A stretch of 64,000 nucleotides of DNA, from IMG/VR virus record IMGVR_UViG_3300049001_000044, positions 279,230-343,229 of that record; one strand, given 5' to 3'. The notes under the pieces are model-generated. The model was given only the letters and a program-made list of their open reading frames with translations. It searched no databases and had not been told where the DNA came from. Of the stretch, positions 7,143 through 56,676 are shown one piece after another. Within the stretch, counting starts at the first letter, position 1. Each line of letters starts with the position of its first letter. Made by a program: the position numbers and the translations under genes.

Positions 7143-7237
7143 GCTGGAGCTTACTAGAAGCGCCCAGAGGTGTTAGGACCGTTAAGATGATAGCTTCATC
7201 ATCATTAAGCAGCAGGACCTCTGGGAGGTCCTGCTGC
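7143..7237 (+). repeat. Dispersed ~90-bp intergenic element, copy E1
   Basis: Starts GCTGGAGCTTACTAGA (identical 16-mer to E5); ends in 12-bp perfect hairpin GCAGCAGGACCT-CTGGG-AGGTCCTGCTGC. Confidence 0.75.
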
Positions 7238-7342
7238 GAGGCGGTGGTCTACTTTCGATTTAGAGAGCAGAGCTTCGTTTTTATATTGCCCAGGTTGCAC
7301 GACCGAAGACTCCGACGGTCTCTGAGCTTGCTGCTTGACAGG

Positions 7343-7350
7343 TATTTATA
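7343..7350 (-). promoter_or_regulatory. Late promoter TATAAATA
   Basis: Exact T4 late consensus, ~235 nt upstream of transglycosylase start. Confidence 0.65.
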
Positions 7351-7367
7351 TGCTTTGCAGTGAGTAC

Positions 7368-7399
7368 ATTTTAACAAAATGATAACCTGGCGAAAACTG
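7368..7399 (-). promoter_or_regulatory. Early-type promoter CAGTTTTC-N18-TAAAAT
   Basis: Matches a motif repeated with identical spacing at about 10 intergenic sites. Confidence 0.65.
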
Positions 7400-7400
7400 C

Positions 7401-7428
7401 GCAAAATAAAAGGGCCCGAAGGCCCTTT
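7401..7428 (-). terminator. Rho-independent terminator
   Basis: AAAGGGCC-TTCG-GGCCCTTT followed by T-tract on minus strand. Confidence 0.8.
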
Positions 7429-7464
7429 GTAAACTGAGTGCTTAGGAGTTAGAACGACAGTATC

Positions 7465-8187: not shown

Positions 8188-8190
8188 TGG

Positions 8191-8793: not shown

Positions 8794-8807
8794 ACTTACT
8801 CCTGTTT

Positions 8808-18534: not shown

Positions 18535-18831
18535 TTACATGTCACGAATGATGGCAAGAACGTCTGCTTCAGCCATGATGGTGAAGACTTCGCCTTCAAC
18601 CTTCACTTCTTGGCCAACGTTCTTGGCGAAGATCACAGTGTCACCTGCTTGAACTTGCAGTGGCTTCACATTGCCGTTCTTGTCTTCACGGCCTGGACCG
18701 ACTGCAATCACAACACCACGGTCAGGGCGTTCGCTCGAAGTGTCGGGGATGTACAGACCACTTTCGGTCTTCTTGACGGTGTCTGCTTTTTGGACTACGA
18801 TGCGGTCCAGGATAGGATTGATTTGTGCCAT
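18535..18831 (-). CDS. groES: Co-chaperonin GroES
   Basis: PILDRIVV, TESGLYIP mobile loop, AVGPG. Confidence 0.95.
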   Translation of the reverse strand: MAQINPILDRIVVQKADTVKKTESGLYIPDTSSERPDRGVVIAVGPGREDKNGNVKPLQVQAGDTVIFAKNVGQEVKVEGEVFTIMAEADVLAIIRDM

Positions 18832-24296: not shown

Positions 24297-24455
24297 TTAG
24301 GGTGAGATTCGATGTTGTTTGTATTTGCGGAGGCCGCACGTCTGGCATTCCCGCTCTTGAATGAACGAGTAGCCTTTCACCGCGCCAGTGCGTGAGCTAA
24401 TGATTTCAGTTTTGTGGATGGTGCTCCAGCGGCCCCAACTATGGAAGTGAAACAT
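24297..24455 (-). CDS. Small CxxC protein (52 aa, not in track)
   Basis: AAGGAGG RBS; ...RECQTCGLRK; early-type promoter 24478-24509 upstream. Confidence 0.6.
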   Translation of the reverse strand: MFHFHSWGRWSTIHKTEIISSRTGAVKGYSFIQERECQTCGLRKYKQHRISP

Positions 24456-24506
24456 GTTGCCTCCTTATCATACAGCTATTGTAGCTTGATGGCAACCTCA
24501 ATGAAA

Positions 24507-25856
24507 CTACGTCCTGCCCACCAACATGTAGCGATCATATTGGATGAACGTCCTCGTACCCTCATACAGAACTTCCGAAAGATTGAGTGCTTTACGGAGT
24601 TCATGTGAGTTGTTGACGCATGAGACGTGCCCCTCGCCTTGAAGGTAGTTGTTGTTCTGCACAATGATTAGCTTTCCAGCGGGAATCTTCTCACGCCATG
24701 CAGGGATATTTGGGATATGTTCTGACGAAGTGTTGATGATGACGTCAAACTGCGAGTAGTCAAGTTGGTACATGTCCATCGTCATCGTACCAAATCCTTC
24801 GTAGTCGTAATTGAGTTTTTCAGCGATACGATTGGCGCGCGGATCCAAGTCTATCGACGTCACCTTCAATGACAGCTCCTTACAGTGGAGCATGAGAGTG
24901 AGGGTACCGATCCATCCACCAAGAATTGCAACTCTACTTCCCTTCTCCAACACGCCTTCATCTAACATCGACTGAAGTCTCTCAGCCAACCACATCTTGC
25001 TGAGGATTTGCCCATCTGAAATTGCATCCCTAATCTCAGTCAATGGAAGATTTCCCAACACGTAGGGATCGTATAGCGCGCTAGCAATTCGGGTGGTGAA
25101 GAAGAATTCTTGTTTCATTGGATGGTCAGGTGCTGGAGTTGGATCTTTGATAGGATCAATGGTTGGGTCGGTCGAGGGAGCTTCGATCAAATCACCTAGC
25201 AGTTTAAGCATGAAGTCATGGTCATTGATGAACATGAGATCAGCATTTTTCTCTGCCTCCTTCACACCTAATTCTGCGGCTTGCCTGATGATGTCGCTAA
25301 AGTCGCAAGGGATTGGATTCAACCATCTCTTCAATCGATCCTCGGCTTCCATTCTAACGAACTTCGGCTTAATAGGATCCTGTGTTGTCCTCCACAACTT
25401 TGCTGCCTCCCTAAATGCGCCGCGGGCACTACGATAGTGATCGCTGTTGAAGTGAGTGGTGCAGACAGTTTGCGGGATAACCTTGATGTCCTTCGTCAGA
25501 GTCGTGGTGAAATCAAGCTGAGATTGGACGTTCTTAAAGAAGGCCTTGTTGAATAGCTTGACGCCACCGTACCCATAACTAATGCCTAACGCAGGGTTCA
25601 TCGCGTACCAGACATGGACATAGTTCTCATCACCCTCTTTAGGCTTGTAGGAGAAGTCGAAGGTGGGATGAATAGTGGCGTCAGCATCGACCACGTAGAA
25701 GAACTTGGTGAGAGCTTTCTTCGAGGCGGCAATGTGAGCGTTGGCGATACCCTTTACTCCGTGGACACGGCGGGCATGAGGAAAGCGAGCCTTCAACGCA
25801 GCGAAGTTCTTGTCTGCGTTGGGCTCGTCGTATGAGATGAAGATGATGTCTAGCAT
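24507..25856 (-). CDS. Fusion of GT-A-like glycosyltransferase and class I SAM methyltransferase
   Basis: N-terminal VVDAD (DxD), paralogous to 43578-44501; C-terminal AILGGWIG, SIDLDP, IINTSSEH; CGTAAATA at 25861-25868. Confidence 0.7.
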   Translation of the reverse strand: MLDIIFISYDEPNADKNFAALKARFPHARRVHGVKGIANAHIAASKKALTKFFYVVDADATIHPTFDFSYKPKEGDENYVHVWYAMNPALGISYGYGGVKLFNKAFFKNVQSQLDFTTTLTKDIKVIPQTVCTTHFNSDHYRSARGAFREAAKLWRTTQDPIKPKFVRMEAEDRLKRWLNPIPCDFSDIIRQAAELGVKEAEKNADLMFINDHDFMLKLLGDLIEAPSTDPTIDPIKDPTPAPDHPMKQEFFFTTRIASALYDPYVLGNLPLTEIRDAISDGQILSKMWLAERLQSMLDEGVLEKGSRVAILGGWIGTLTLMLHCKELSLKVTSIDLDPRANRIAEKLNYDYEGFGTMTMDMYQLDYSQFDVIINTSSEHIPNIPAWREKIPAGKLIIVQNNNYLQGEGHVSCVNNSHELRKALNLSEVLYEGTRTFIQYDRYMLVGRT

Positions 25857-25878
25857 GCCGTATTTACGGCACGTAGAA

Positions 25879-26124
25879 TCACGGTAGGAAGTAGATGTAC
25901 TTGGAGTCGATGCTCGTGACGTTCGTGTCGGTCATCGACGCCTTGTTCTTCAGGACACGGCCATCAGTGGAATCGGTCATGCGAGACAGCGTACGATCGA
26001 CGAAGGCCTTTGGATAGCGACGGCCCAGCTGCGTCTCGACGATGTGATGGAGCTGATTGCTGTCAGAGCGGACAGTGGTTTTCAGTGCGTTGATAATGAT
26101 GGATGGAACAGTTTGCTTTGCCAT
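25879..26124 (-). CDS. Small basic hypothetical protein
   Basis: Start MAKQTV; downstream of promoter 26159-26190. Confidence 0.6.
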   Translation of the reverse strand: MAKQTVPSIIINALKTTVRSDSNQLHHIVETQLGRRYPKAFVDRTLSRMTDSTDGRVLKNKASMTDTNVTSIDSKYIYFLP

Positions 26125-26158
26125 GGTGATACCTTTCATCGAAGTTAGTTAACGTAAA

Positions 26159-26190
26159 ATTTTAGAACGTAGGAGGTGCTCGAAAAACTG
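26159..26190 (-). promoter_or_regulatory. Early-type promoter CAGTTTTT-N18-TAAAAT overlapping element E2
   Basis: Motif match with exact spacing. Confidence 0.65.
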
Positions 26191-26251
26191 CGTGTAGTGG
26201 CTGTCAACAGCTTTGCATGGAGGTCTCTGAGCACCTCTGGTAAGTCCCAGC
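26171..26251 (-). repeat. Dispersed element copy E2
   Basis: Minus strand GCTGGGACTTACCAGAGGTGCTCAGAGACCTCC...CTACA...GAGCACCTCC; begins right after the yqeY-like stop. Confidence 0.75.
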
Positions 26252-26683
26252 TTATTGCTGCTTCAACAGCTCGTCGATGATCTGCGAAGCCAGCTTACCG
26301 TCGAACTTGCCTGCGAAGTTGTCCTTCAGGTACTTCATGCAGGTACCTTTGTTCAGCTGCAGACCAGATGCAGCCAGCGCATCCATGATCTCCTGGCCAT
26401 TCATTTGTTTCGGCAGATAGGCAGACAGAATCTTCTTCTCTTGCTCCATCGTCTCAGCACTGTCGTACGACCTTTGAGCGTAGAGGATAGTGAGGGTGTC
26501 ATCAACACCCTTGATGAATTTCTTGATGACTTGAATGACCTCTTGGTCGTTCGTCTCGCGGTTGCCGTCGTTTTTACCGATGGTTGCCGCCTCACCGATC
26601 AGGGTGGTGAGCAAAGTTGCTTCTGCCTTGTTGCCGTTCTTTCGTGCTTGCAGTTGGTCTGCTTTCAGTTGTTGCATCAACAT
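26252..26683 (-). CDS. GatB/YqeY domain protein
   Basis: LKADQLQARK...EKKILSAYLPKQM. Confidence 0.85.
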   Translation of the reverse strand: MLMQQLKADQLQARKNGNKAEATLLTTLIGEAATIGKNDGNRETNDQEVIQVIKKFIKGVDDTLTILYAQRSYDSAETMEQEKKILSAYLPKQMNGQEIMDALAASGLQLNKGTCMKYLKDNFAGKFDGKLASQIIDELLKQQ

Positions 26684-26685
26684 GA

Positions 26686-27804
26686 TTAGTCCTTTTCTTT
26701 CAGTAGGAATTTGTTCGAGATGGTCTTGAAGGAGAACAGGCCGTCCATACGCTTGTAAACCAGACCTTCACGGATTGGGTGAGTGATGGATGGACCTTCG
26801 GCTTTTGCCAGCAGGTCTTCGATGGTTGTGCCAGCTGGAATCTTAAACTCTTGTTCCAGGATAGGGACGTGCTTGAAGTTCTTACCCATCTGGAAGTTGT
26901 GAGTGATGATCTCAAACAGCTGCCACCTTGCTTCCGGCGCCATGTATTCCTGGCGATCGATGTCGAAGATGTCGAAGACGTGGAACTCGAAGTCCTTCAG
27001 ATTCTCCCTGTTGCCTTGGATACCAGGACCCATCAGCTCGCCTTGAATTGCGATGTTGCGGCCCAGATTCTGCAGCATGTTCAGCACACCAGTGGTAGTG
27101 GCGGTCTTGATGAGGGTGTTGTCCTTGTTGTCCTCGTTTACCTTCAGTTCCAGGTTACGCGAGCAGACACCGACTTCACCGTTGAAGTGGTAGATGGTCA
27201 GCGACGAGCCATCCAGCTTCATCGTGACTTCGTACTCTGCTTCATTGTCGTTCACGACGTTCGGCATATTCTGAACGCGCTCTTGATCAGTCTTGCGAAT
27301 GAACGACGGGAACATACCCTTCACTTGACCAACCAGCTGCGGCGGGATCGGCGGTTCCCACTTGACAACACCCAGCAGTTCAGCGAAGTCTTGCTCGCGG
27401 ATGGCAGTCAGATGTTCGCCAGCCTTGGCGACGACATCGTTCAGATCAGCGCACGTACCGAAGTCAGGGATAGTGCTGATGATGTGCCGTGCGATCTCAG
27501 GGAACTTGCGCAGTGGGATCGAGAAGCCTTGGCTGACTTGACCACGCAGCTTGATGGTGCGCAGACGGTGGCCACGCTTGCCTTCGTACTCCCTCCCTGC
27601 CTTGTCGACCAGGTCTTGCCAACGTTCATCACCATCTGGCAGGAAGCTGTCGATCTCGAAGTAGACCGCGAAGTCACCTTGCTGGTAGTTGCCTTTCTGG
27701 CTTACGACGTTCCAGCCTTCAATGGTGATGCGCTCGATGCTGTCGGCACCTTCGATGGGATTTACCGCCGACACTTGGCGGACTGTTACCAGTTTACGTG
27801 TCAT
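26686..27804 (-). CDS. RNA ligase, Rnl2/DRB0094-type
   Basis: FPSFIRKTDQER, TMKLDGSS, QGELMG, REGLV, FKTIS; likely start MTRKL. Confidence 0.9.
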   Translation of the reverse strand: MTRKLVTVRQVSAVNPIEGADSIERITIEGWNVVSQKGNYQQGDFAVYFEIDSFLPDGDERWQDLVDKAGREYEGKRGHRLRTIKLRGQVSQGFSIPLRKFPEIARHIISTIPDFGTCADLNDVVAKAGEHLTAIREQDFAELLGVVKWEPPIPPQLVGQVKGMFPSFIRKTDQERVQNMPNVVNDNEAEYEVTMKLDGSSLTIYHFNGEVGVCSRNLELKVNEDNKDNTLIKTATTTGVLNMLQNLGRNIAIQGELMGPGIQGNRENLKDFEFHVFDIFDIDRQEYMAPEARWQLFEIITHNFQMGKNFKHVPILEQEFKIPAGTTIEDLLAKAEGPSITHPIREGLVYKRMDGLFSFKTISNKFLLKEKD

Positions 27805-27814
27805 GTTGTTTTCC

Positions 27815-27967
27815 TTATTTGATTTCGATATCGTGGATGTCGCCACCCATGTCTTCAGCCAGAATGTGGAGAGACTCCTTCACCATCTCCATGTTCGCAT
27901 GGTAGTTTTCGTCGGCGAAGAATTCTTCTGGCAAGCAATGGATGGTGACGTACAGTTTCAGTTCCAT
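27815..27967 (-). CDS. Small acidic protein (50 aa, not in track)
   Basis: MELKLYVTIHCLPEEFFAD..., coupled. Confidence 0.55.
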   Translation of the reverse strand: MELKLYVTIHCLPEEFFADENYHANMEMVKESLHILAEDMGGDIHDIEIK

Positions 27968-28269
27968 TATTTGCTCCAGCTCTTCCAATCATGAGGACAG
28001 ATGTCCTGCACTGGGCATTGATCGCAGTACCAGTCGTCGTGGTAGTAGTGCTCACCCTTCGCTTTGGCTTCTGCTTCATAGGTGAGAATGCAGCCCCATG
28101 GCTTGATGTTTTCGGGGTCACCCTTCCTACCACCCCAACCCCAGTCAACCGGCATTGTGTCGCAGATCTTGGTGCAGAGCTCTTGGAGCTTTTTCCCCTG
28201 CATGTCCAAGTGCAACTTCTGCTTTTCCTTCAGCGCATCGTACTCTTCTTGTGTGAGGATGTACTGCAC
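27967..28269 (-). CDS. Cys-rich hypothetical protein
   Basis: WGC...YCDQCPVQDICP. Confidence 0.7.
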   Translation of the reverse strand: MQYILTQEEYDALKEKQKLHLDMQGKKLQELCTKICDTMPVDWGWGGRKGDPENIKPWGCILTYEAEAKAKGEHYYHDDWYCDQCPVQDICPHDWKSWSK

Positions 28270-28572
28270 TTAATCACCTTGGAAGATGTAGTGAATGAGG
28301 TCAGCGATGATCTTGTGCGCTGCCTTGTTGTCATGCGGCCACGCTCGACCATCAGGGCATTTTTCGATGTCGCCAGGGACCACGCCATAGCGGACCAGGG
28401 GATCAAACACTTCATACTGCCACGAGCTGTTGCCGAACGGTCGCTTGCCGCTGAAGCCTTCTTCCTCATACCACAGGGTGGTGAGGAGACGTTGGAGGTA
28501 CTCACGGATGGTGAGCGTCTCGTTCAGATCATCACTGCGAAATTTCAACTCTGCGATGTCTCGTAGTTCCAT
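28270..28572 (-). CDS. Hypothetical protein
   Basis: Start MELRDIAE; WYEEEGFSGKRPFGNSSW. Confidence 0.7.
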   Translation of the reverse strand: MELRDIAELKFRSDDLNETLTIREYLQRLLTTLWYEEEGFSGKRPFGNSSWQYEVFDPLVRYGVVPGDIEKCPDGRAWPHDNKAAHKIIADLIHYIFQGD

Positions 28573-28724
28573 TATTTCCCCGTGAGCTTGGCAATGATCG
28601 CTAGTGGGATCATCAGAAATTGTTGAAAGAGAGTAGGTTTGCGGCGGTCGAAAGCGGTGATGAATGCGCTGCCACAACCCGCCACGAACCACAACAGTGC
28701 GAAGAAGAGAATCCAGCCTACCAT
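28572..28724 (-). CDS. Small membrane protein (50 aa, not in track)
   Basis: MVGWILFFALLWFVAG... Confidence 0.55.
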   Translation of the reverse strand: MVGWILFFALLWFVAGCGSAFITAFDRRKPTLFQQFLMIPLAIIAKLTGK

Positions 28725-28969
28725 TAGAACACCACCGCGCAGAGCTTCAAACCTTCTTCCTTAGGATCGCGTTCGTAGTATTCCAGGTCTTGACCCGTCA
28801 AACACTCACGCGACTTCGGATCGTAGTAGTTGGCATGTTCTCCAGATGGGATGAATTCAACACCACGAACGTAGTGGTAGCCATTGCCTTCATCATCTTC
28901 TTGCATGACGAGCGGAATGCTGTCGTCAAGTTCTGCGAGGTCTCGTTTAAGATCACCGATCGTGTACAT
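28724..28969 (-). CDS. Hypothetical protein
   Basis: 81 aa, coupled. Confidence 0.65.
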   Translation of the reverse strand: MYTIGDLKRDLAELDDSIPLVMQEDDEGNGYHYVRGVEFIPSGEHANYYDPKSRECLTGQDLEYYERDPKEEGLKLCAVVF

Positions 28970-29221
28970 TTAGGTTGCCTTGTTTTCGTAGGAGAAGTGG
29001 ATGAAGCAGCCCGTGCCACCGCAACCACATTGGACGATGTTGTGGTTGTTGCCTTTCAGCTCCACTTCACCGCGGTTGATCTTGCTGTTTCGAATGGCTT
29101 CGTCCAGCTTGACGATCGCCATGTCATACAGTGTGTAGAAGCGCCGACCGTTTCCACGGCTCAGCTTGTTGCCAACGAGGCGTTTGATTGAACGCTTCGA
29201 ATGCGGAATACGCTTACTCAT
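28970..29221 (-). CDS. Basic hypothetical protein
   Basis: 83 aa; CGCGGTGC. Confidence 0.6.
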   Translation of the reverse strand: MSKRIPHSKRSIKRLVGNKLSRGNGRRFYTLYDMAIVKLDEAIRNSKINRGEVELKGNNHNIVQCGCGGTGCFIHFSYENKAT

Positions 29222-29369
29222 CCTCTTCTCCTTTCCATTGACGATACTCGGCGAGAGCTTCCCAGTACCATTCCCAGTTATCTACGCCACCATTGATAAG
29301 TGAATTCAACTTCGCCGAATCATCGAGGAGCTTTTCATACTCCTCTTTTGAAATAGTAACAGTTCCCAT
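29214..29369 (-). CDS. Small protein (51 aa, not in track)
   Basis: MGTVTISKEEYEKLL...GVDNWEWY. Confidence 0.6.
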   Translation of the reverse strand: MGTVTISKEEYEKLLDDSAKLNSLINGGVDNWEWYWEALAEYRQWKGEEDE

Positions 29370-34417: not shown

Positions 34418-34834
34418 TTAGTCAAGGAAGATCACGCGTGCAGTGCCTGCCTGAGCAGCTGAGAACTGCAGTTCAACCGTATTTTCATCAATGATTCTGA
34501 TGAGGTCGGGGAGGATGACAGCTTTGTTCTCATCGAAGGCCTGGATGATCACATTCTCAGAATCGAGATTGTGTTCAATGGTCCAGACAGTTTCAGGAGA
34601 AGCAACCGCGAGTACGAACTTACGCACACTAGACAGGCCGCCAGCACCACCTAGGTTGGTACCAGTCAGCACACCATTCACCATAGCCAGAACTTGGCCT
34701 TCTGTCATGGTGACGCCATCGAACTGTCGAGCACCAGGACCACGACGAACAATGATCGACTCTTGAGGAACGTCTACATCCAGGTAACCACGCTTAGGAA
34801 GTTCCCGTTGGATGAAGTCTTCAAACGCGCTCAT
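34418..34834 (-). CDS. Virion/tail protein
   Basis: WTIEHNL...VIIQAFD motif. Confidence 0.7.
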   Translation of the reverse strand: MSAFEDFIQRELPKRGYLDVDVPQESIIVRRGPGARQFDGVTMTEGQVLAMVNGVLTGTNLGGAGGLSSVRKFVLAVASPETVWTIEHNLDSENVIIQAFDENKAVILPDLIRIIDENTVELQFSAAQAGTARVIFLD

Positions 34835-38162: not shown

Positions 38163-39029
38163 ATGAAGAAAATCAATGTGGCGGCAACTGTCCTGGTATC
38201 GATGATCCTCTCGGCCTGTGGCGGTGGAGGCGGTGGTAGTTCCACCCAAACCCCACCAGTCGCACAAGTCCCGGTCTCCCTGCCTATCCTCAACATTAAC
38301 GACCAACTCACCAAGTCCGCAAATGCTGACACCCTGGGCTTCGAGCCTGCGAACATGTCCCACACCTCGGGCGAACTGCAAACCAACACTGGGTTCTGGG
38401 GAGTGAAGTCGGCTTCCGCCTACTACGAGAACGTGGTGGGGACGATCGACCCGAATACGAACATCGCCAACGTCACCTTCAACTGGGACATCACGTCCTC
38501 GCAAACCCCTGGCGTTGTGAACTTCTCCAACATCACCTACGGCCTGCACCCTGGCTCCGCCTTCTCCACCACGAAGAAGCTCCCTGTGCGAGTGACGAGC
38601 ATGGGAGACCAGGTGGTAAATGCGGATGTGAAGACGAGCTGCGAGACCACGTGCTCCTACCAAACGATGCTGGACGTCTTCGTGATGAGTTCGAATAGCA
38701 CGAGCAACGCGGACATCGGAACCGAGATCGTCATTCTGACGGATCGCAACATCGGTCCTTCTGATCTGACGGGTGAAACAGCAACGATCGGCGGCGTCAC
38801 CTACAAGGTCGTGCACAACGGCTTCATCACCAACTGGAACGCCATCCAATACTTCGCGCCCATCGGTACCCCGATTAACTCGATGAAGATTAATGTCAAG
38901 GACTTCGTCAACGACGCTTTGCAACGTGGCTGGATTAAGAGCACCGACTACCTGGTCTCCATCGAACTGGGCACGGAAGTAATCCAGGGTAAGGGCAAGA
39001 CCGAGATCAAGAATCTGCACTTCAACTAA
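38163..39029 (+). CDS. Glycoside hydrolase family 12-like (endoglucanase fold) lipoprotein
   Basis: Lipobox LSAC plus poly-Gly; NFSNITYG, YQTMLDVF, GTEIVIL (nucleophile Glu), YLVSIELGTEV (acid/base Glu). Confidence 0.72.
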   Translation: MKKINVAATVLVSMILSACGGGGGGSSTQTPPVAQVPVSLPILNINDQLTKSANADTLGFEPANMSHTSGELQTNTGFWGVKSASAYYENVVGTIDPNTNIANVTFNWDITSSQTPGVVNFSNITYGLHPGSAFSTTKKLPVRVTSMGDQVVNADVKTSCETTCSYQTMLDVFVMSSNSTSNADIGTEIVILTDRNIGPSDLTGETATIGGVTYKVVHNGFITNWNAIQYFAPIGTPINSMKINVKDFVNDALQRGWIKSTDYLVSIELGTEVIQGKGKTEIKNLHFN

Positions 39030-39050: not shown

Positions 39051-39075
39051 AAGGGTAGCGTAGGCTACCCTTTTT
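39051..39075 (+). terminator. Rho-independent terminator after GH12 gene
   Basis: AAGGGTAGC-GTAG-GCTACCCTTTTT. Confidence 0.8.
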
Positions 39076-39082
39076 GACGTGC

Positions 39083-39171
39083 GGACCTCCCAGAGACCTC
39101 CTACCTACTTGATGTAGAAGTTAGTGTCGAAATAGGCTATGCATCTCTGGACCTCTCTGGTAAGCTCTAGC
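39083..39171 (-). repeat. Dispersed element copy E3
   Basis: 55/75 ungapped identity to E4 by manual alignment; begins at the stop codon of 39167-39946. Confidence 0.8.
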
Positions 39172-39946
39172 GATAGTAAGAGTGATGCATGTCCTTGATT
39201 GCGTAGAAGTCATCTACTGAATCCATGCCCAAGACCTCTGCTCGATACATGATCTCTGGGAAGTTACTAGCAACCTTCATGTCCAAGTTAATGGCCTGTC
39301 CGTACTTCGTAAGCCTGGTCCCTGGTCCAAGAACATGATAGTTATCGATCCTCCGTTTTGGCGCTTCACCCTCGCGAATCTTTCGGAAGATATCGCAGAC
39401 CAGATCCATACCCCACGAGTCACCGAAGAAGATGCAATCTGACGCATTGAATTGGTTGTACTCTAATCCCATTCGATAGTTGTGCGGGAAGTAAATCGTG
39501 CGATCACCAATCCAATTGTCTCTTAATTGATCCATCACGCTGGTGTCAGGGTCAAAGACGTTATCGTACCGACATTTGAACACGACATCGTAGCGGAAGC
39601 CCATCTCAATCTCATGTGCACGCTTAAGATGGTTGGCAATCATCATCGACCAATACAAACTGCCAAAAGGAACGTATCCCATTGGCTCCTGCGCCTTGAA
39701 CAAATCTTCTTGCGTCTCAATGACGTAGGAAATTGGATTGAATTGTAACAGCTGTTCAGTCAACCAGTCCTTGTCAAGTTGTTGGTACTCGCCTATTGAA
39801 TGATCAGGAAGTTTCCAAGTGTTGTAGTCCCAAGCATGACAGAAGAAGTCAACTTGAACTCCTTCTGCATTAAAATATCTGAGGATAGATTTCCGAGCGA
39901 ACTCAATCGACCTAGGTTGCCCGGATAAACAGACTGCGATTCTCAT
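39167..39946 (-). CDS. Putative glycosyltransferase-like protein
   Basis: MRIAVCLSGQPR, FFCHAW, YDVVFKCRYD, SDCIFFG. Confidence 0.6.
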   Translation of the reverse strand: MRIAVCLSGQPRSIEFARKSILRYFNAEGVQVDFFCHAWDYNTWKLPDHSIGEYQQLDKDWLTEQLLQFNPISYVIETQEDLFKAQEPMGYVPFGSLYWSMMIANHLKRAHEIEMGFRYDVVFKCRYDNVFDPDTSVMDQLRDNWIGDRTIYFPHNYRMGLEYNQFNASDCIFFGDSWGMDLVCDIFRKIREGEAPKRRIDNYHVLGPGTRLTKYGQAINLDMKVASNFPEIMYRAEVLGMDSVDDFYAIKDMHHSYYR

Positions 39947-40451
39947 AATTGACACACTCAGTGGATAGGGAAAGGGTTTGCAGATGGTAATAGAACTTGG
40001 CGGCGTCATCTACGCTTGGACCGCGGATTTGATTGACGGGAATGTTCTTGAGATTAGTGTGGTACTCACACGCCCTATCGAATTCCCAACTGCGAGCGAT
40101 GAACACGCATGGGTTAACACTCGTCAGCCAATGCTTCTTGTCGAAGCCACCTGTCATGTAGTAGATGAAGTTCTTTTGAAGGTCGACCTTCTTGTCAGCA
40201 TCGTACACCATCTCGATGTGCCTTACGTCGAACATCACATCAGTGTCGTACGCCATACAGATTTTGAATTCGACGTGAGTCTGAAATTCAGCTGTCTTCT
40301 TCTTGTGCGATACAGTTTCGAGGGCAAGAAACTTGTCTTCGTCAAAGTGATGGAAGAAGGTCATTGGGAATGGGAACCACTTCTGAAGCTTAGCTTGAAG
40401 TTCAGTGGTGTCCACACTCTTGGTTCCGTAAAAGCAAACTGCGTAAGTCAT
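39912..40451 (-). CDS. Hypothetical protein, distantly similar to downstream gene
   Basis: YAVCFYG start; late glycan operon context. Confidence 0.6.
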   Translation of the reverse strand: MTYAVCFYGTKSVDTTELQAKLQKWFPFPMTFFHHFDEDKFLALETVSHKKKTAEFQTHVEFKICMAYDTDVMFDVRHIEMVYDADKKVDLQKNFIYYMTGGFDKKHWLTSVNPCVFIARSWEFDRACEYHTNLKNIPVNQIRGPSVDDAAKFYYHLQTLSLSTECVNYENRSLFIRAT

Positions 40452-50510: not shown

Positions 50511-50720
50511 ATGGAAGACAATCAAATTCCACCGAAGAACGAGTGGCCTAATCTTTCGGTTTCCCAACTGCACGATGTCAAGAACGCCCTTCTCAACAAG
50601 TACTGGGCCATGCGTGGGATCAATGCGTCATTTGCGAACTCATATTTGGGCTTCGTTAACCACGTAGACGCGATCATCGCGTACAAAGAGAACGAAGCCC
50701 AAACAGCTGAACACGATTAA
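50511..50720 (+). CDS. Small late hypothetical protein
   Basis: GAGG RBS; AGTAAATA 50472-50479. Confidence 0.65.
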   Translation: MEDNQIPPKNEWPNLSVSQLHDVKNALLNKYWAMRGINASFANSYLGFVNHVDAIIAYKENEAQTAEHD

Positions 50721-51256
50721 GTCCAGAAGTGGTGGCGCCAAGCCACGATGCGGTGGAGCATGTCATCGCACTTCTTGATATGCTCTTCTTCTTTCTCCCA
50801 ACTGAAGCCATTCGCTACGTGGTCGAACTCCCACTGCCCAGTGACGTACCACTCGTACATCCAGATCAGCTCCATGTAGGTGAGATAACGGGTCGTCATC
50901 TGGTCACGGGTGAATCCGCACTCTTCGACCGGTGCATTTTCGCCGTAGTACTTCTCCACATATTCACGCATTTCTGCAATGTTGGTGTGGCACTTCTGCT
51001 TGTGCTTGCTACCCCAGTCGACGAAGGGCTGTTCACCTTCAATGAAGTCGACGAAGATGGTGAACATTGCATGAAGGAGAACGTAGTCGCGATCATGCCA
51101 TCCACGTCCCATGTTCTTTACCTTGATGACATTCCAAGGGAAGAAGATGTCCTTGACGCCAATGTACGCGCTTCGAATTTTCGAGCGAATGCGGCGGGCG
51201 CGGTCCTTCCAGGACGGCTTGTAATCTTTGAGAAGTTCGTCAAAATCGATTTCCAT
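50717..51256 (-). CDS. Trp-rich hypothetical protein
   Basis: 179 aa; WHDRD...LHAMF; promoter 51281-51312. Confidence 0.7.
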   Translation of the reverse strand: MEIDFDELLKDYKPSWKDRARRIRSKIRSAYIGVKDIFFPWNVIKVKNMGRGWHDRDYVLLHAMFTIFVDFIEGEQPFVDWGSKHKQKCHTNIAEMREYVEKYYGENAPVEECGFTRDQMTTRYLTYMELIWMYEWYVTGQWEFDHVANGFSWEKEEEHIKKCDDMLHRIVAWRHHFWT

Positions 51257-51315
51257 ATTTGCTCCTTTGTCGTATAGCTTATTTTATACGAGAAGCAACC
51301 TTACGAAATCAATAT

Positions 51316-51414
51316 CCTGGGGCTTACCAGAGGTGCTCAGAGATGTGTGAGTAAGTTCAACACTAACAACTACATCGAAGTAGTAGGAGGTCTCTGAGCA
51401 CCTCTGGTCCCAGC
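51316..51414 (+). repeat. Dispersed element copy E4 with 18-bp perfect terminal inverted repeat
   Basis: ACCAGAGGTGCTCAGAGA (51326-51343) / TCTCTGAGCACCTCTGGT (51391-51408). Confidence 0.8.
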
Positions 51415-51415
51415 G

Positions 51416-51446
51416 CAAAAAAAATCCCACTCGAAGTTGAGTGGGA
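51416..51446 (-). terminator. Rho-independent terminator
   Basis: TCCCACTC...GAGTGGGA plus long T-run on minus strand. Confidence 0.75.
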
Positions 51447-51479
51447 CAAAAAGGGATCGATGATCCCTGCTGAAGAAGG

Positions 51480-52897: not shown

Positions 52898-53359
52898 TTA
52901 GTCGTGAACCCAGAATGTTCGATTCACGTGCTCATCTCCGTAATGGATGAACTGATCATCGATGATCTCACTGATGACAGCCCAATTCCCATTGGCTAGA
53001 CCTGCGCCAATCATCGGGTAGTGAACGTCTTTCTTCAATGTACATGCCGCGACCATCACTGTCTCAAACGCCTGTTGGATGGCCTTGTACGAGACGTATT
53101 TCACTGTGGGGTCTCTGCCATAATTCTGCTGGGTGATCGCGTTGCCGATGATGAGGTCGTCAGTCACTTGAGCCCAAATGACCTCACCCAAAAGCAGACC
53201 GTTTGTCTCGTGCTCTTTGCGGTACACCTCGTACGCCATCGGATACTTGTCACGAATCTGCTTTGCAATGCCACTACCCATGACCCCTTGCGCGTTGCAT
53301 CCGTGGACGATGATTCCCTTCGTCACTGTTAGGATGTCGCCTACCTCAACTCTCTTCAT
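52898..53359 (-). CDS. Macrodomain (ADP-ribose hydrolase/DarG-like; T4 tk.4-like)
   Basis: GDI, IVHGCNAQGVMGSGIA, NAITQ, PMIGAGLANG. Confidence 0.88.
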   Translation of the reverse strand: MKRVEVGDILTVTKGIIVHGCNAQGVMGSGIAKQIRDKYPMAYEVYRKEHETNGLLLGEVIWAQVTDDLIIGNAITQQNYGRDPTVKYVSYKAIQQAFETVMVAACTLKKDVHYPMIGAGLANGNWAVISEIIDDQFIHYGDEHVNRTFWVHD

Positions 53360-53763
53360 TCCAACTCCTCATAGTGGTTCAACACGCGGCTCTTGACAAG
53401 GGCCAGCTCCTTCAGCTCTTCCTGCTTTTGGTTCTGTGCCCAAATCATCTCTGCCATTTTACCAGCTTCAGTAGGTAGCTTGGTCTTGGACGTATTCAGC
53501 ACCAAGTAGTCCATCAACGGCCGCCGCTCCAACTTGAAGCAACCCCATGGAGCAACCCCACTGGCAACTACTTCGCGTAGCTTCCTAACAGCAGCCTTCG
53601 CACTGAACTCGGCATTGAGCGGACAGATGTAGAGCCAGAACTCATACTCACCTGGCCCTACTGGTTTGGCGAGATAGGAAACCCCGCCATTCCTCTGCGG
53701 GGTAACCGTCACTCGATCCTTATTGAAGCGCATAGGCCTCAAGTGACGGAAAATTTCACTCAT
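53356..53763 (-). CDS. Hypothetical protein
   Basis: Likely start MSEIFRH overlapping upstream stop. Confidence 0.6.
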   Translation of the reverse strand: MSEIFRHLRPMRFNKDRVTVTPQRNGGVSYLAKPVGPGEYEFWLYICPLNAEFSAKAAVRKLREVVASGVAPWGCFKLERRPLMDYLVLNTSKTKLPTEAGKMAEMIWAQNQKQEELKELALVKSRVLNHYEELE

Positions 53764-54292
53764 CTTCTGATCCAGCCTCACGTGCTCTTGCAAGGGATTC
53801 GCGAGCTTGTCTACGTGCTTCGTCTTGCATGAGACTGTTGCCACCCTCTACCCATGGATGCTGGTCAGCACCATCAAAATACGAGTAGATGACTTTTGCT
53901 TCTTCCTCGATTTGTTCAGCATAGGCCGCCGCTTGTCGAGCTCGCGCTGCTTCAGCAATTTTCTCGATCACATCATAGATCATCCTTTCGAACTCTACAA
54001 ACAGATCCAAATTTCCCGAGATGTCTTCCATCCAGCTTTCAAGCCCGTAGACGGTAGTTGGGTTCATCAAGTTACCTTGCAGCCAGACTTGAGTTGGATA
54101 ATCGTTGCTGTCGATGAAGATGCTCGACTGTCCGTCGACGTTGAAGTGCCAGCTCAGCTTGTCGTACGTGCCTTGTTCAGCGATTTCAGGGTCAACATGC
54201 GAGAGCCAGTTGAAGACCTTCTGAAGAACAGATGCCAGCAACTGCCTGTCAATGGCTGTCTTCGGTGTGTAAGTGGTGTTTACGTAAGTCAT
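53756..54292 (-). CDS. Hypothetical protein
   Basis: 178 aa; HPWVEGGNSLMQ. Confidence 0.65.
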   Translation of the reverse strand: MTYVNTTYTPKTAIDRQLLASVLQKVFNWLSHVDPEIAEQGTYDKLSWHFNVDGQSSIFIDSNDYPTQVWLQGNLMNPTTVYGLESWMEDISGNLDLFVEFERMIYDVIEKIAEAARARQAAAYAEQIEEEAKVIYSYFDGADQHPWVEGGNSLMQDEARRQARESLARAREAGSEDE

Positions 54293-55188
54293 ACTGCCAT
54301 TTCTCCTGTGATAGCGGCGTGGTGTTGGTAACCAACCAGCTTGAAGTCGTCCATGGTAAAGCCATTGATATCCTTCACGTCAGGGTTGATCCAGAGTTTC
54401 GGTGGGTCGAACGGCTTGCGAGTCAGCTGCTCCTTGACCTGCTCAATGTGGTTCGAGTAGATGTGCGCATCGCCGATGGTCATGATCAGCTCGCCTACTT
54501 CCAAGCCAACGACTTGTGCGATCATGTGAGTGATGATGGCATAGCCAGCGATGTTGAATGGTGCGCCTAGGAACATGTCGTTCGAACGCATGTAGACTTG
54601 GCATGACAGCTTCCCACCACTCACGTAGAACTGGGCGAACATGTGGCAGGGCGGCAGAGCCATTTGATCAAACTCGCCAATGTTCATCGCAGTCAGAATC
54701 ATGCGACGATCAGTTGGGTCGTTCTTCAACTTGTAGATTAGCATGTCAAGCTGATCTACGTAGTCGTACTTACCGAAGAAGGCCTTTACCTTCTGGACAA
54801 AGGTGACAGGGGTCTTGCGCCAGTTGCGCCATTGAACGCCATACACACGACCAAGGTCACCAGCAAACTTGGCCTTTGGAGTCCAATAATCGGCTTCTGC
54901 GTTGCCTGACCAGATGGTGCGTTTCAGTGGATCACGAGTTCCATGCAGAATTTCTGCAAGCCTACGCTCATCACTCGAGCCCTCGATGAAGAACAGATCT
55001 TCAGATACGACTGACTTGAATGCGAGACGTTTGGTGGTGATGGCGGGGAATGCTTTCGACAGATCGAATCGCATTTGACGGCCAAAGACTGAGATGGTAC
55101 CGACGCCAGTACGATCCATTCGCTCCTCACCGTTAGTGAGGATGTCTTGGTATAGGTCTAGGAGTTGTTGTTCAGGGTAGTAGGACAT
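54289..55188 (-). CDS. thyA: Thymidylate synthase
   Basis: DRTGVGT, ALPPCH, RSNDMFLGAPFN, HIYSNH. Confidence 0.96.
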   Translation of the reverse strand: MSYYPEQQLLDLYQDILTNGEERMDRTGVGTISVFGRQMRFDLSKAFPAITTKRLAFKSVVSEDLFFIEGSSDERRLAEILHGTRDPLKRTIWSGNAEADYWTPKAKFAGDLGRVYGVQWRNWRKTPVTFVQKVKAFFGKYDYVDQLDMLIYKLKNDPTDRRMILTAMNIGEFDQMALPPCHMFAQFYVSGGKLSCQVYMRSNDMFLGAPFNIAGYAIITHMIAQVVGLEVGELIMTIGDAHIYSNHIEQVKEQLTRKPFDPPKLWINPDVKDINGFTMDDFKLVGYQHHAAITGEMAV

Positions 55189-55721
55189 GTTTTGATAAGC
55201 AGACCCTCTTCGTCGAGGATCCGAAATGCGGAGGTTAAAATCTTGGAGGCGTGCTGGAAGTGGAAGCCGTGTGCCTTGTCTCGATCAGCATTTCCTGCTA
55301 CGTTGAGGCACTCGACGTTGTTATTTACGATGAAGTAGACCAGCTCGGCTGCCTTCATGTCGTAGTCTACGCCATCAAGAAGGAGGGAGAGGCATGGCTT
55401 CTTTGCTGCATTCACATAGCGGAGAGTTAGCACTTCCCCTGCAGTGTCAAAGTTGGATGCTAGTCGGACGGTGGCGTCGCCTTCATACGCATTGGCCCTA
55501 GTGCGCGGTGGATAGTCTCTCGATGAGGAGACCGTCAAATTGAATTGGGCGAGAGTGGGATCATCACCTAACGCAGTGCGATAGCCTCGTGCAATGTGCC
55601 CACCTGTCTCAATTTGAAAGTCACGAGCAACAAACAGACCGGCCTGATCTGCACCGGTCTGTGCGCCGCTGATGACCTTACGTAACCCTGTGTAGGGCAG
55701 GTCAAGTAGCTTGTGATTCAT
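55158..55721 (-). CDS. SLOG-superfamily protein (putative molybdenum-carrier/YpsA-like)
   Basis: [20 protein letters not shown]. Confidence 0.75.
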
Positions 55722-56568
55722 TCTCTTCCATCTTGTATTTGGTTTGGTCGATGAATGCTTGGATCTGTTCAGGGGTCAGATCATCGAGCTTCGGAATCAC
55801 AGGCATAACCCGCAGTAGTAGGTCACCCCTGTTGCTCTGCTTGGCGTCAGTCCAATACCCCTTGCCCTTGATCTTCAGCAGCTTGCCTGCTTCGAATCCA
55901 GATGGGATGCGGACAGTGCCAGTGCTGCCATCTACTGTGAAGACCGACTTGAAACCGCCCGTCATGATAGTGAACCAATCCACGAACATGGTTTGAGTGA
56001 TGTTGCCACTTCCTTCCTTTGCACCACCATACAGCCATGGCTCAGTAGCCCACACGACATTCGCATCTTCAACGTCAATGTCGAGCACCAAATCGATCGT
56101 ATAGTCTAGCCCACCATTCTTGCCAGCGACGGTCTTCAACTTCATGCCAGGCTTCATACCTGGACCGATGTCTACCGTCTCGATGTAACCGGCAACCTTC
56201 GTCAAGTCGACTTTCTTCGTGACACCAGTGAATGCTTCCTTCAGGGAGATTTTGATGGTGACTTGGTAGTGGCGAGCCCGTTTCATCTGCTCATGTTGGC
56301 TTCGAGCTCTGTTGATCTCTTCCTCGAAGTCATTCATGGTCTTGCTGTAGTTGGACCAGAAGTTCGGATTGACGGGGTCTTCCTGTTTGGATTCCAGGAA
56401 CTCGTACGCCTCTTTCATCTCCTTGAACTTTCCCTCGACCTCTGCTTCCTTGCCGGGATTTCGATCAGGGTGGTACTTCATGGATAGCTTACGATACGCC
56501 TTCTTGATCTCGTCATCAGAAGGTTTACCAGTCAGGCCCAACAGTGCGAGTGCTTTCGCTCGATTCAT
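55702..56568 (-). CDS. dnaJ: DnaJ/CbpA-like chaperone lacking Zn finger
   Basis: J domain KYHPDRN; C-terminal KGKGY...GDLLL. Confidence 0.88.
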
Positions 56569-56591
56569 CTTACACTTTCAAAAATCAGGAA

Positions 56592-56676
56592 GGCCCAGAG
56601 ACCTCCAGGCTTTCCTATGTAGTTGCTTATGACTTTGCAGTGAGAGGTGCTCAGAGCACCTCTAGTAAGCTCCAGC
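56592..56676 (-). repeat. Dispersed element copy E5 with perfect palindrome AGAGGTGCTC-A-GAGCACCTCT
   Basis: Palindrome at 56643-56663; begins 2 nt after stop of 56679-57077. Confidence 0.8.

What the first reader, a model, noticed from the sequence alone, without database searches (positions are those of the whole stretch)
7143..56676. Family of five dispersed, ungapped-collinear ~90-bp intergenic elements with fixed motif geometry
Seen in sequence: copies at 7143-7237(+), 26171-26251(-), 39083-39171(-), 51316-51414(+) and 56592-56676(-). All begin with a GCTRGRGCTTACYAGA-like 16-mer (E1 and E5 identical). Measured from the G of GCTTAC (A in E2), CTACA sits at offset +48 in four copies (CATCA in E1). 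A CTC(TG) core sits at +70 in all five, preceded by GGAGGT in three. No indels are needed. E3 and E4 match at 55/75 positions without gaps. Three copies start within a few nt of a stop codon; two sit downstream of a terminator in reverse orientation; two overlap or abut early-type promoters. Inference: substitutions are tolerated but spacing is not, which suggests a two-site protein-binding DNA element (recombination/resolution site, origin, packaging or nucleoid-anchoring site), a structured small-RNA family, or a REP/PeSL-like mobile regulatory cassette that marks gene-shuffling junctions. None of the annotated genes explains it.
Basis: partly seen in the sequence, partly recalled or inferred. 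Interest (0 to 1): 0.85.

Follow-up and report, generated by a model that had tools for sequence, protein, structure and literature searches.

The report
Fixed-geometry intergenic repeat family, jumbo phage
Five ~90-bp intergenic stretches in this giant-phage genome are copies of one conserved DNA element, made of short motifs held at exact distances, that is also found in a distantly related cultured Ralstonia phage and most likely serves as a docking platform for an unknown DNA-binding protein rather than as an RNA or a jumping element.

Summary
The window is the last 64 kb of a 343-kb uncultured jumbo myovirus (IMGVR_UViG_3300049001_000044). I found 11 copies in that genome and 8 in close relatives. 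At least 5 diverged copies occur in cultured Ralstonia phage RsoM2USA, whose DNA polymerase is 47% identical.

All 19 close copies align over 100 columns with no gap. The element is built of pentamers one helical turn apart: YRGAG at -10, YAGAG at 0 and +10. An inverted CTCTG sits at +64, sometimes with another at +74. Between the arms is an A+T-richer spacer with a weak central motif.

Between orthologues the left module is 91% identical, the spacer 58% and the flanks 44-56%. The two arms are complementary only at consensus level. There is no covariation and no shared fold. Copies lie in both orientations relative to transcription.

I found no Rfam match, no sigma-70 promoter inside any copy, no target-site duplication and no transposase nearby. 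I saw no presence/absence polymorphism.

Best reading (about 0.45): a cis-acting, protein-bound DNA platform that is bent or looped. The bound protein and the downstream role (replication, insulation or genome organisation) are unknown.

The parts
7144..7234 (+). E1, a full element. It is antisense to the flanking minus-strand genes. It lies between a late-promoter-like TATAAATA (minus strand, 7343-7350) and the start of gene 6481-7140.
   Evidence: HMM E=4e-19. Weight-matrix score 78.8 with anchor 7155. The orthologue L005a/L048 is retained.
7144..7169 (+). E1 left module: box CTGGAGCTTAC plus two phased pentamers. The first is degenerate (TAGAA); the second is CAGAG at 7165-7169.
   Evidence: Ungapped alignments.
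7213..7225 (+). E1 right module, with inverted pentamer CTCTG at 7219-7223. It is embedded in a 13-bp-stem local hairpin.
   Evidence: Two pairs of this hairpin changed on both sides between E1 and its orthologue (read directly).
26160..26250 (-). E2, a full element. It is in sense orientation and fills the 112-nt spacer between genes 26252-26683 and 25879-26139.
   Evidence: HMM E=6e-16. Weight-matrix score 64.1 with anchor 26239. The orthologue L038a is retained.
26225..26250 (-). E2 left module, with CAGAG at 26235-26239 and 26225-26229.
26169..26181 (-). E2 right module. It is degenerate: CTCCT at 26171-26175.
39080..39170 (-). E3, a full element in sense orientation. The stop codon of gene 39167-40009 lies inside its box. 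A bidirectional terminator follows at 39051-39072.
   Evidence: HMM E=8e-19. Weight-matrix score 81.2 with anchor 39159. Terminator.
39145..39170 (-). E3 left module: three phased pentamers, TAGAG at 39165-39169, CAGAG at 39155-39159 and CAGAG at 39145-39149.
39089..39101 (-). E3 right module, GGAGGT followed by CTCTG at 39091-39095.
51317..51407 (+). E4, a full element and the most palindromic copy. It is antisense and lies between minus-strand terminators (51424-51468) and a late-promoter-like TATAAAAT (minus strand, 51281-51288) upstream of gene 50717-51256.
   Evidence: Weight-matrix score 91.8 with anchor 51328. Terminators. The orthologue L052a is retained. A copy at the syntenic position and in the same orientation exists in RsoM2USA at 332,184.
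51317..51342 (+). E4 left module, with CAGAG at 51328-51332 and 51338-51342.
51386..51406 (+). E4 right module: GGAGGT, CTCTG at 51392-51396 and a second inverted pentamer at 51402-51406.
56585..56675 (-). E5, a full element. It is in sense orientation and fills the spacer between gene 56679-57077 and the J-domain gene 55702-56568.
   Evidence: Weight-matrix score 81.5 with anchor 56664. HMM E=7e-19.
56650..56675 (-). E5 left module: TAGAG at 56660-56664, with the second pentamer replaced by CTGAG. This makes a local 9-bp hairpin.
56594..56606 (-). E5 right module, GGAGGT followed by CTCTG at 56596-56600. It doubles as the stem of a terminator-like hairpin followed by a T-run.

Best explanation
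The copies are members of a conserved cis-acting DNA element that works as double-stranded DNA.

**Anatomy**
- The left half is three 10-bp units: YRGAG-CTTAC, YAGAG-GTGCT and YAGAG-A(CC/TG). The three pentamers therefore lie on one face of the helix.
- One or two inverted pentamers, (GGAGGT)CTCTGRG, face them 54-64 bp away. That is about 5 and 6 helical turns, so they lie on roughly the same face.
- The arms are separated by an A+T-richer spacer of fixed length. It carries a weak central motif, AGATAnTAnCnnCTACATC.

**Proposed mechanism**
An oligomeric, sequence-specific DNA-binding protein occupies the phased pentamers of both arms. It bends or loops the spacer into a defined nucleoprotein complex. 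The protein is most likely phage-encoded, because the element is confined to one jumbo-phage lineage and conserved across it.

**Shown versus inferred**
- Shown: the family, its geometry, purifying selection on the modules, its age, and the lack of evidence for a common RNA or ssDNA fold.
- Inferred: protein binding and looping.
- Unknown: what the complex does. In my order of preference the candidates are (1) a transcriptional insulator or regulator at gene boundaries, (2) a replication-initiation or helicase-loading site, and (3) a genome-organising site like parS.
For: **Fixed geometry**
- 19 copies align over 100 columns with no gap.
- Spacer identity among copies within one genome is only 37%, against 27-29% in the flanks.
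- Pentamers sit at 0 and +10 in nearly all copies, and at +64 in 15 of 19.

**Selection on sequence, not on pairing**
- Five orthologous pairs come from genomes 70-79% identical.
- Identity is 91% in pentamers 1+2, 78% in the box, 80% in the right pentamer, 58% in the spacer and 44-56% in the flanks.

**Age**
- RsoM2USA's DNA polymerase is 47% identical to the window's.
- It has significant full-length matches at 206,975/206,897, 182,608, 18,440, 332,184 and 304,607 (scores 9-31), plus further half modules.
- The best scores in 10 whole-genome shuffles ranged from -7.8 to 7.6.
- All of these significant matches are intergenic, and most full-length ones keep the 0/+10/+64 spacing (304,607 lacks the right pentamer, 39,950 is shifted by 1 bp).
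- The copy at 332,184 is syntenic with E4 and in the same orientation.

**No RNA signal**
- Arm pairing is 68.2% against 69.9% in shuffles, and 478 of 500 shuffles do at least as well.
- The consensus fold energy is -0.09 kcal/mol.
- Hairpins in the spacer have no common axis.
- Different copies would pair in different registers, yet the linear positions of the pentamers are the same.

**Other points**
- Copies occur in both orientations relative to transcription and in different transcript contexts: 5' UTR, intercistronic, 3' UTR, and between a terminator and a promoter.
- The spacer is 57-78% A+T from +25 to +54 and the arms 35-55%.
Against: - No binding protein is identified, and nothing here demonstrates binding.
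- The arms are an inverted repeat at consensus level. E4, E1 and E2 fold significantly better than shuffles (z = -6.8, -4.7, -2.6), so hairpin or cruciform formation in some copies is not excluded.
- E1's local hairpin shows two compensatory pair changes against its orthologue.
- The test for missing indels between orthologues is weak. MAFFT places 2 gap events inside the elements (net length between the modules unchanged in all copies) and 12 outside, P=0.14. The length argument therefore rests mainly on the copies within one genome and on RsoM2USA.
- A family of dispersed copies must once have spread, so a mobile origin is likely.
- RsoM2USA also has left modules without the full architecture. 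The module, not the 90-bp unit, may be the functional site.
Confidence: 0.45

Rival explanations
1. The copies are a miniature non-autonomous mobile element (MITE-like). The arms are terminal inverted repeats bound by a transposase encoded elsewhere, in the phage or in the host. The copies are selfish insertions into short intergenic spacers.
For: - The arms are up to 22 bp of inverted repeat at consensus level.
- Copies are dispersed from 39 kb to 336 kb of the contig, with unrelated flanks.
- They occur in both orientations and fill spacers that are otherwise tiny.
- Flanking genes are mostly ORFans.
- One 410-bp gene insertion/deletion begins exactly in the right arm of copy L006a.
Against: - No target-site duplication is visible at the copies with the longest inverted repeats (E4, L030a, L052a; sequences).
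- No transposase, recombinase or HUH nuclease turned up among about 55 window or flanking proteins searched.
- In about 35 kb of orthologous comparison, every copy is present in both genomes.
- The modules are 91% conserved between orthologues while the flanks are near saturation. E4's locus is kept even in RsoM2USA. Neutral decay of a selfish insert does not predict this.
- The left and right ends are strongly asymmetric.
- No copy occurs in 185,579 bacterial or archaeal genomes beyond chance matches to the search seed.
Confidence: 0.2
2. The element acts as RNA: a long imperfect hairpin in the transcripts that serves as an RNase III-type processing site, a 3' stabiliser or a terminator. A palindrome could do this in either orientation.
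For: - E4, E1 and E2 fold better than shuffles on both strands.
- E2, E3 and E5 begin at the stop codon of the upstream gene.
- E5's right module forms a terminator-like hairpin with a T-run.
- E1's 3' hairpin has two compensatory pair changes against its orthologue.
Against: - There is no covariation, and pairing is no better than in column shuffles.
- The consensus fold energy is about zero.
- E3 has z = -0.5 on both strands.
- The pairing register differs among copies while the linear spacing is fixed.
- E4 lies between two terminators and the next promoter-like motif, so it may not be transcribed.
- No Rfam family matches, even at E<=10, apart from generic hairpin noise.
- A fixed loop length is not needed for a hairpin.
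Confidence: 0.15
3. The copies are PeSL-like regulatory cassettes. Their repeated sequence serves as short homology for recombination, shuffling adjacent ORFan genes between phages.
For: - The phage has T4-type replication and recombination genes.
- Neighbours are mostly ORFans.
- One gene insertion/deletion sits flush with a copy (L006a against L050a).
- Downstream of E2, the neighbouring gene is only 43% identical to its orthologue, and the next gene (449 aa) is absent from the relative.
- The genes flanking the E4 locus differ between the window and RsoM2USA, although the element is kept.
Against: - The defining promoter plus stem-loop is absent (definition in PMC4122927).
- Gene indels are frequent everywhere in these comparisons, at least 5 in about 35 kb. 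One flush case among 10 element flanks is not enrichment.
- Recombination homology does not require fixed internal spacing, nor conservation of pentamers only.
Confidence: 0.1

Closest known systems
SAS/ESAS repeats of Cluster K mycobacteriophages (PMC3203893)
   Same: - Between 11 and 19 dispersed copies per phage genome.
- An asymmetric conserved motif plus imperfect inverted repeats, with the left repeat better conserved than the right.
- Conserved at orthologous loci across subclusters.
- Contains a GGAG-like core.
- Function unknown; a host or phage factor is suspected.
   Different: - SAS sites sit immediately upstream of start codons, and nearly all are in one orientation.
- The ESAS spacer is short and variable (4-13 bp).
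- Here both orientations occur, there is no fixed relation to start codons, and the spacer is long and of invariant length.
- There is no sequence similarity between the two.
PeSLs of T4-type phages (PMC2839356, PMC4122927)
   Same: A dispersed, repeated intergenic motif in a T4-related genome, found next to ORFan genes. One copy borders a gene insertion/deletion.
   Different: PeSLs are a sigma-70-type (or Mot-type) promoter followed by a terminator-like stem-loop, oriented with transcription. Here there is no promoter consensus, copies lie in both orientations, and the conserved parts are phased pentamers.
REP/BIME elements of enterobacteria, especially BIME-1/RIP: two inverted REPs around an IHF site (from my own knowledge)
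   Same: - Intergenic, often just after stop codons.
- Occur in both orientations.
- Two inverted arms around a central protein-binding or bendable segment.
- Bound by DNA-architectural proteins (IHF, gyrase).
   Different: - REPs are chromosomal and number in the hundreds.
- Each arm is itself a stable palindrome conserved as a structure.
- They are linked to RAYT transposases.
- None of these features is seen here, and no copy is found in bacterial genomes.
Two-arm bent sites such as P1 parS or lambda cosB, and iteron/AT-rich/inverted-site origins such as lambda ori or HSV oriS (from my own knowledge)
   Same: Short repeated boxes on two arms, in direct and inverted orientation, flank a bendable or A+T-rich centre. 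Helical phasing between the arms is critical. This is the geometry seen here.
   Different: Those sites are present once, or a few times, per replicon and have known binding proteins. This family has at least 11 copies per genome, and no partner protein is known.
Stoperators of Cluster A mycobacteriophages (from my own knowledge; mentioned in PMC3203893)
   Same: Tens of dispersed protein-binding sites in short intergenic spacers near stop and start codons of a phage genome.
   Different: Stoperators are single 13-bp asymmetric sites, oriented with transcription and bound by the immunity repressor of temperate phages. This element is a composite of about 90 bp, occurs in both orientations, and belongs to a T4-like phage with no repressor found in the parts searched.

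Membership tests
PeSL (promoter-early stem-loop) | A sigma-70-type promoter (TTGACA-N17-TATAAT or a close variant) inside the motif. | tested here: not met
   Promoter scans around all five copies find none inside an element. Definition from PMC4122927.
PeSL (promoter-early stem-loop) | A terminator-like stem-loop adjacent to the promoter, oriented with transcription. | tested here: not met
   Only E5 has a terminator-like hairpin within the element. Orientation is mixed.
Structured RNA family (Rfam or novel) | A match to a curated covariance model. | tested here: not met
   No hit at gathering thresholds in 64 kb. Only generic hairpin or terminator noise at E<=10.
Structured RNA family (Rfam or novel) | A conserved secondary structure supported by covariation. 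| tested here: not met
   Pairing is 68.2% against 69.9% in shuffles. RNAalifold energy is -0.09 kcal/mol, with 4 invariant pairs. The spacer has no common hairpin axis.
MITE / non-autonomous transposon | Terminal inverted repeats. | tested here: inconclusive
   The consensus arms are inverted repeats of up to 22 bp. The conserved left end extends 11 nt further with no right-hand counterpart in most copies.
MITE / non-autonomous transposon | Target-site duplications and filled/empty site polymorphism. | tested here: not met
   No duplication flanks E4, L030a or L052a. All five copies with an orthologous locus are present in both genomes.
MITE / non-autonomous transposon | A cognate transposase in the same genome or in the host. 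| tested here: inconclusive
   None among about 55 proteins searched. About two thirds of the 343-kb genome was not available, and the host is unknown.
REP/BIME | High-copy chromosomal elements of the host, with each arm a structure-conserved palindrome. | tested here: not met
   No full-length copy in one genome from each of 185,579 bacterial and archaeal species. No structural conservation.
Cluster K SAS/ESAS | Position immediately upstream of start codons, in a single orientation. | tested here: not met
   Distances to the next start codon vary from about 16 to more than 200 nt. Three copies lie between convergent genes. Orientation is mixed.
Phased-iteron protein-binding site (generic class) | Short repeats at integral helical-turn spacing, conserved in sequence and spacing but not in the intervening bases. 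| tested here: met
   Pentamers at -10, 0, +10, +64 and (+74). The same spacing occurs in RsoM2USA.
Phased-iteron protein-binding site (generic class) | Demonstrated binding of a specific protein. | not testable with these tools
   Needs EMSA, pull-down or DAP-seq.
Integron attC | R''/L''-L'/R' boxes (RYYYAAC ... GTTRRRY) and a structure-conserved single-stranded hairpin of variable length. | tested here: not met
   The core boxes are absent from the consensus. The length is invariant and there is no structural covariation.

The most novel reading that the evidence does not exclude
The elements are the cis sites of an undescribed system in non-nucleus-forming jumbo myoviruses. A phage-encoded protein would assemble head-to-head on the inverted, helically phased pentamers and act on the A+T-rich 49-bp spacer. 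This could be a set of a dozen or more dispersed replication-initiation or helicase-loading sites. Alternatively it could be a parS-like chromosome-organising or insulating system for a 340-kb phage genome.
Probability: 0.15. Interest if true: 0.85.

Novelty: new variant of a known kind. Interest (0 to 1): 0.62.

Why it matters
Dispersed cis-element families in phage genomes are rare entry points into phage-specific regulation. PeSLs, stoperators and SAS/ESAS are the known examples, and several remain unexplained.

This family has an unusually strict architecture: phased pentamers, an invariant 64-bp geometry and a freely evolving spacer. It has been kept at the same loci since before two genus-level jumbo-phage lineages diverged. 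That argues for a function important to the phage.

The family also occurs in the cultured phage RsoM2USA, which infects Ralstonia solanacearum. The binding factor and the function can therefore be sought directly by experiment.

Tried and rejected
- **Rfam and tRNA/tmRNA scans:** nothing.
- **BLAST against 50,697 isolated phage genomes:** no similar sequence with E4 or with the RsoM2USA copy as query. The RsoM2USA members were found only with the profile and weight matrix.
- **Bacterial and archaeal genome scan with the 17-mer:** 19 hits, all matches to the search seed only.
- **Metagenome scan:** only the same small phage clade.
- **The search for related loci with the J-domain neighbour of E5:** returned only unrelated J-domain proteins, which cost one scan. 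It did fix the window's position at contig 279,230-343,229.
- **Promoter readings from the sequence:** sigma-70 scan negative. By eye, sigma-54 and MotA-box spacing do not fit. A possible extended -10 on the reverse strand (TGGTAAGCT) is not conserved, and for sense copies it would fire antisense.
- **SD+ATG reading of GAGGTGCTCAGAGATG:** it opens only 3-9-codon ORFs, and half the copies have ACC instead of ATG. One RsoM2USA module does supply a real start codon.
- **Type III restriction site idea:** CAGAG is the StyLTI site (from memory), and head-to-head pairs are the cleavable arrangement. But CAGAG and CTCTG are neither depleted nor strand-biased in the window: 70 and 60 occurrences against a 5-mer mean of 62.
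- **Central dyad or hairpin in the spacer:** no common axis.
- **Indel deficit between orthologues:** not significant, P=0.14.
- **Enrichment of gene indels at element borders:** one flush case, not distinguishable from the background rate.

Full report
**Where the window comes from**

The window is identical to the last 64 kb (about 279,230-343,229) of IMG/VR contig IMGVR_UViG_3300049001_000044, which is 343,229 bp long. It encodes T4-type functions:
- a family-B DNA polymerase
- a DnaB-like helicase and a Toprim primase
- both topoisomerase II subunits
- two RNA ligases
- a DsbA-like protein and a GroES-like protein
- thymidylate synthase and PhoH

Most genes are on the minus strand. The polymerase's best match among isolated phages is Ralstonia jumbo phage RsoM2USA, at 47% identity. 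No isolated phage matches at the nucleotide level.

**Checking the observation**

A profile HMM and a full-length weight matrix find exactly these five in the window, far above shuffled controls. The phased sub-patterns occur only inside copies.

**Extending the family**

Pattern scans of viral and metagenome collections, followed by HMM confirmation, added two sets of copies.
- Six more copies lie in the same genome, at contig positions of about 39.0, 71.2, 154.6, 194.6, 231.8 and 236.4 kb.
- Eight copies lie on contigs of closely related phages, which are 70-79% identical at the nucleotide level.

The pattern scans can only find copies with a near-consensus core. They would have found 3 of the 5 window copies. 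The true number in the genome is therefore probably about 15 or more; this is my inference. Hits in bacterial and archaeal genomes are chance matches to the search seed only.

**Anatomy**

I anchor coordinates on the first YAGAG: E1 7155 (+), E2 26239 (-), E3 39159 (-), E4 51328 (+), E5 56664 (-). MAFFT aligns all 19 copies over 100 columns without a single gap.

The conserved parts are as follows.
- **Left module, -11 to +14.** It consists of three 10-bp units. It reads TAGAG in E3 and L001a, and GAGAG in L006b.
- **Right module, +58 to +70.** It reads (GGAGGT)CTCTGRG. CTCTG sits exactly at +64 in 15 of 19 copies, and a second inverted pentamer sits at +74 in several.
- **Central motif, +30 to +48.** It is weak: AGATAnTAnCnnCTACATC.

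The spacer is 57-78% A+T from +25 to +54 and the arms are 35-55%. Centre-to-centre distances between pentamers are 10, 54, 64 and 74 bp. These are close to whole numbers of helical turns; that is my inference from the positions.

**RNA or DNA?**

At consensus level the arms are reverse complements. E4, E1 and E2 fold well on either strand; E5 folds only marginally and E3 does not. Across the family, however, the evidence is against a shared fold.
- The 22-bp arm helix is paired in 68.2% of cells, against 69.9% in column shuffles. Of 500 shuffles, 478 do at least as well.
- RNAalifold finds no consensus structure; the energy is -0.09 kcal/mol.
- Small hairpins in the spacer have axes scattered from +25 to +52.
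- Copies whose left arm ends in ACCTCC mostly lack GGAGGT on the right, and the reverse. They would therefore pair in a register shifted by 10 nt. Yet the linear positions of the pentamers are unchanged.

What is conserved is therefore sequence at fixed linear positions, not pairing.

**Position relative to transcription**

Transcript context differs from copy to copy.
- E2 and E5 are in sense orientation between two genes of the same direction.
- E3 is in sense orientation in a 3' UTR, ahead of a bidirectional terminator.
- E1 is antisense, downstream of a TATAAATA late-promoter-like motif (minus strand, 7343-7350).
- E4 is antisense, between two terminators (51424-51468) and a TATAAAAT motif (51281-51288).
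- L006a and L001a lie between convergent genes.

The closeness to stop codons mostly reflects that the element fills spacers that would otherwise be tiny.

**Selection and age**

Five copies have orthologues in the related phages, and all five are present there. Identity between orthologues breaks down as follows.

| Region | Identity between orthologues |
|---|---|
| Pentamers 1+2 | 91% |
| Box | 78% |
| Right pentamer | 80% |
| Spacer | 58% |
| Flanks | 44-56% |

Among copies within one genome, the modules are 71-84% identical, the spacer 37% and the flanks 27-29%.

A direct count of gaps between orthologues is not significant: 2 gap events inside (net length between the modules unchanged), 12 outside, P=0.14. 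The length argument therefore rests on the copies within one genome. Their spacers have diverged almost to randomness, at roughly one substitution per site, without any net indel. At the flank ratio of about one gap event per 23 mismatches, I would expect about one indel per lineage. This is a rough inference.

The strongest evidence comes from RsoM2USA. I assembled the seven fetched segments and scanned them with the weight matrix.
- Significant full-length matches lie at 206,975(-)/206,897(+), 182,608(+), 18,440(-), 332,184(+) and 304,607(+). Their scores are 9-31.
- A borderline match lies at 39,950(+).
- The best scores in 10 whole-genome shuffles ranged from -7.8 to 7.6.
- Several left modules occur alone, for example the same 22-mer at 304,567(-) and 96,332(-).
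- All of these lie in annotated intergenic spacers; two further double-pentamer hits (218,021 and 303,690) lie in coding sequence and may be chance.
- Most keep the 0/+10/+64 spacing (39,950 is shifted by 1 bp; 304,607 lacks the right pentamer).
- The copy at 182,608 even keeps ACTTACC before the first pentamer.
- The copy at 332,184 lies between the homologues of the window's PhoH and Macro-domain genes, in the same orientation as E4. The immediately flanking small genes are not homologous.

Retention of sequence modules and spacing at a syntenic locus, across this much divergence, is not expected of a neutrally decaying insert.

**Mobility and gene shuffling**

Three hallmarks of a mobile element are missing.
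- No target-site duplication is visible.
- No transposase or nuclease gene lies in the neighbourhoods or in the window.
- No filled/empty site polymorphism was seen.

One 410-bp segment carrying a 111-aa ORFan is present in the reference genome and absent in the relative. Its breakpoint lies inside the right arm of L006a. Gene indels are frequent throughout these comparisons, so a single case is not enrichment. The family must have spread at some time, so a mobile origin followed by retention remains plausible.

**Comparison with known elements**

The element fails the defining features of several known families; see the membership table.
- PeSLs: promoter plus stem-loop (PMC4122927).
- REP/BIME.
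- attC.
- SAS/ESAS: a fixed position at start codons and a short, variable spacer (PMC3203893).

In how it seems to work, it most resembles two kinds of composite site. One is the bent site built of short boxes on two arms, such as P1 parS or lambda cosB. The other is the iteron/A+T-rich/inverted-site origin. That comparison comes from my own knowledge, not from a test here. Among phage repeat families, SAS/ESAS is the nearest descriptive parallel.

**Verdict**

The rivals rank as follows: mobile element 0.2, RNA hairpin 0.15, PeSL-like recombination cassette 0.1. The partner protein and the biological role remain unknown. Because the family is present in a cultured phage, both can be tested directly.

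Noticed in passing
window 7143-7400, compared with L048:14420-14728: The whole 250-nt intergenic region containing E1 is about 90-95% identical to the relative, although the genomes are about 78% identical overall. It contains a TATAAATA late-promoter-like motif (minus strand, 7343-7350). The changes cluster in E1's arms. There, the 13-bp-stem hairpin at 7209-7237 shows two pair changes on both sides. This could reflect a locus-specific RNA or DNA hairpin, or templated mutation of a quasi-palindrome.
   Followed up: partly
L006:2066-2475 (contig about 231.9-232.3 kb), compared with L050:2561-2565: A 410-bp segment with a 111-aa ORFan (L006:2071-2406, minus strand) is present in the reference phage and absent in the relative. 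Its left breakpoint lies inside the right arm of element L006a.
   Followed up: partly
window 24348-25879: A 449-aa ORFan (24507-25856, minus strand; no PHROG or Pfam hit) is missing from the related contig L038, which has about 500 nt there instead. The small gene between it and E2 is only 43% identical to its orthologue, while neighbouring genes are 65-73% identical.
   Followed up: partly
RsoM2USA record 304,480-304,654 (L125:4480-4654): The 159-nt spacer upstream of gene 430 (GroES/Cpn10-like) holds three pentamer modules: two direct ones 67 nt apart and one inverted. The ATG of one module is the annotated start codon of gene 430. The window's Cpn10 homologue (18535-18831) has no such module.
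   Followed up: partly
window 38163-39029 (+): A glycosyl hydrolase family 12 gene lies on the plus strand, among minus-strand genes. It converges on the gene that carries E3 and shares a bidirectional terminator with it (39051-39072).
   Followed up: no
window 34371-34394: A perfect 24-nt palindrome lies between convergent genes 33986-34327 (+) and 34418-34834 (-). It is probably a bidirectional terminator.
   Followed up: no
window 26252-30496: This stretch looks like an RNA-repair gene cluster. It holds two RNA ligases, one at 26686-27846 (PHROG RNA ligase family) and one T4 Rnl1-like at 29369-30496, next to a YqeY/GatB-like protein (26252-26683). A further RNA ligase with weak HNH-like N-terminal hits lies at L037:9357-10412, just downstream of element L037a.
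   Followed up: no
RsoM2USA record 71,222-71,346 (L128:21222-21346): A stretch inside annotated gene 100 matches the family's central motif and outer right arm (GATGATAGCAACTACATC ... GAGCACCTCTGG) but lacks the left module. Its weight-matrix score is only 2.3. It may be a partial element or a chance match.
   Followed up: no
window 6481-7140 and 39167-40009 (both minus strand): Two genes adjacent to elements score poorly with a codon-usage model trained on the window's long genes, although both match PHROG families. This may indicate atypical composition or recent acquisition.
   Followed up: no
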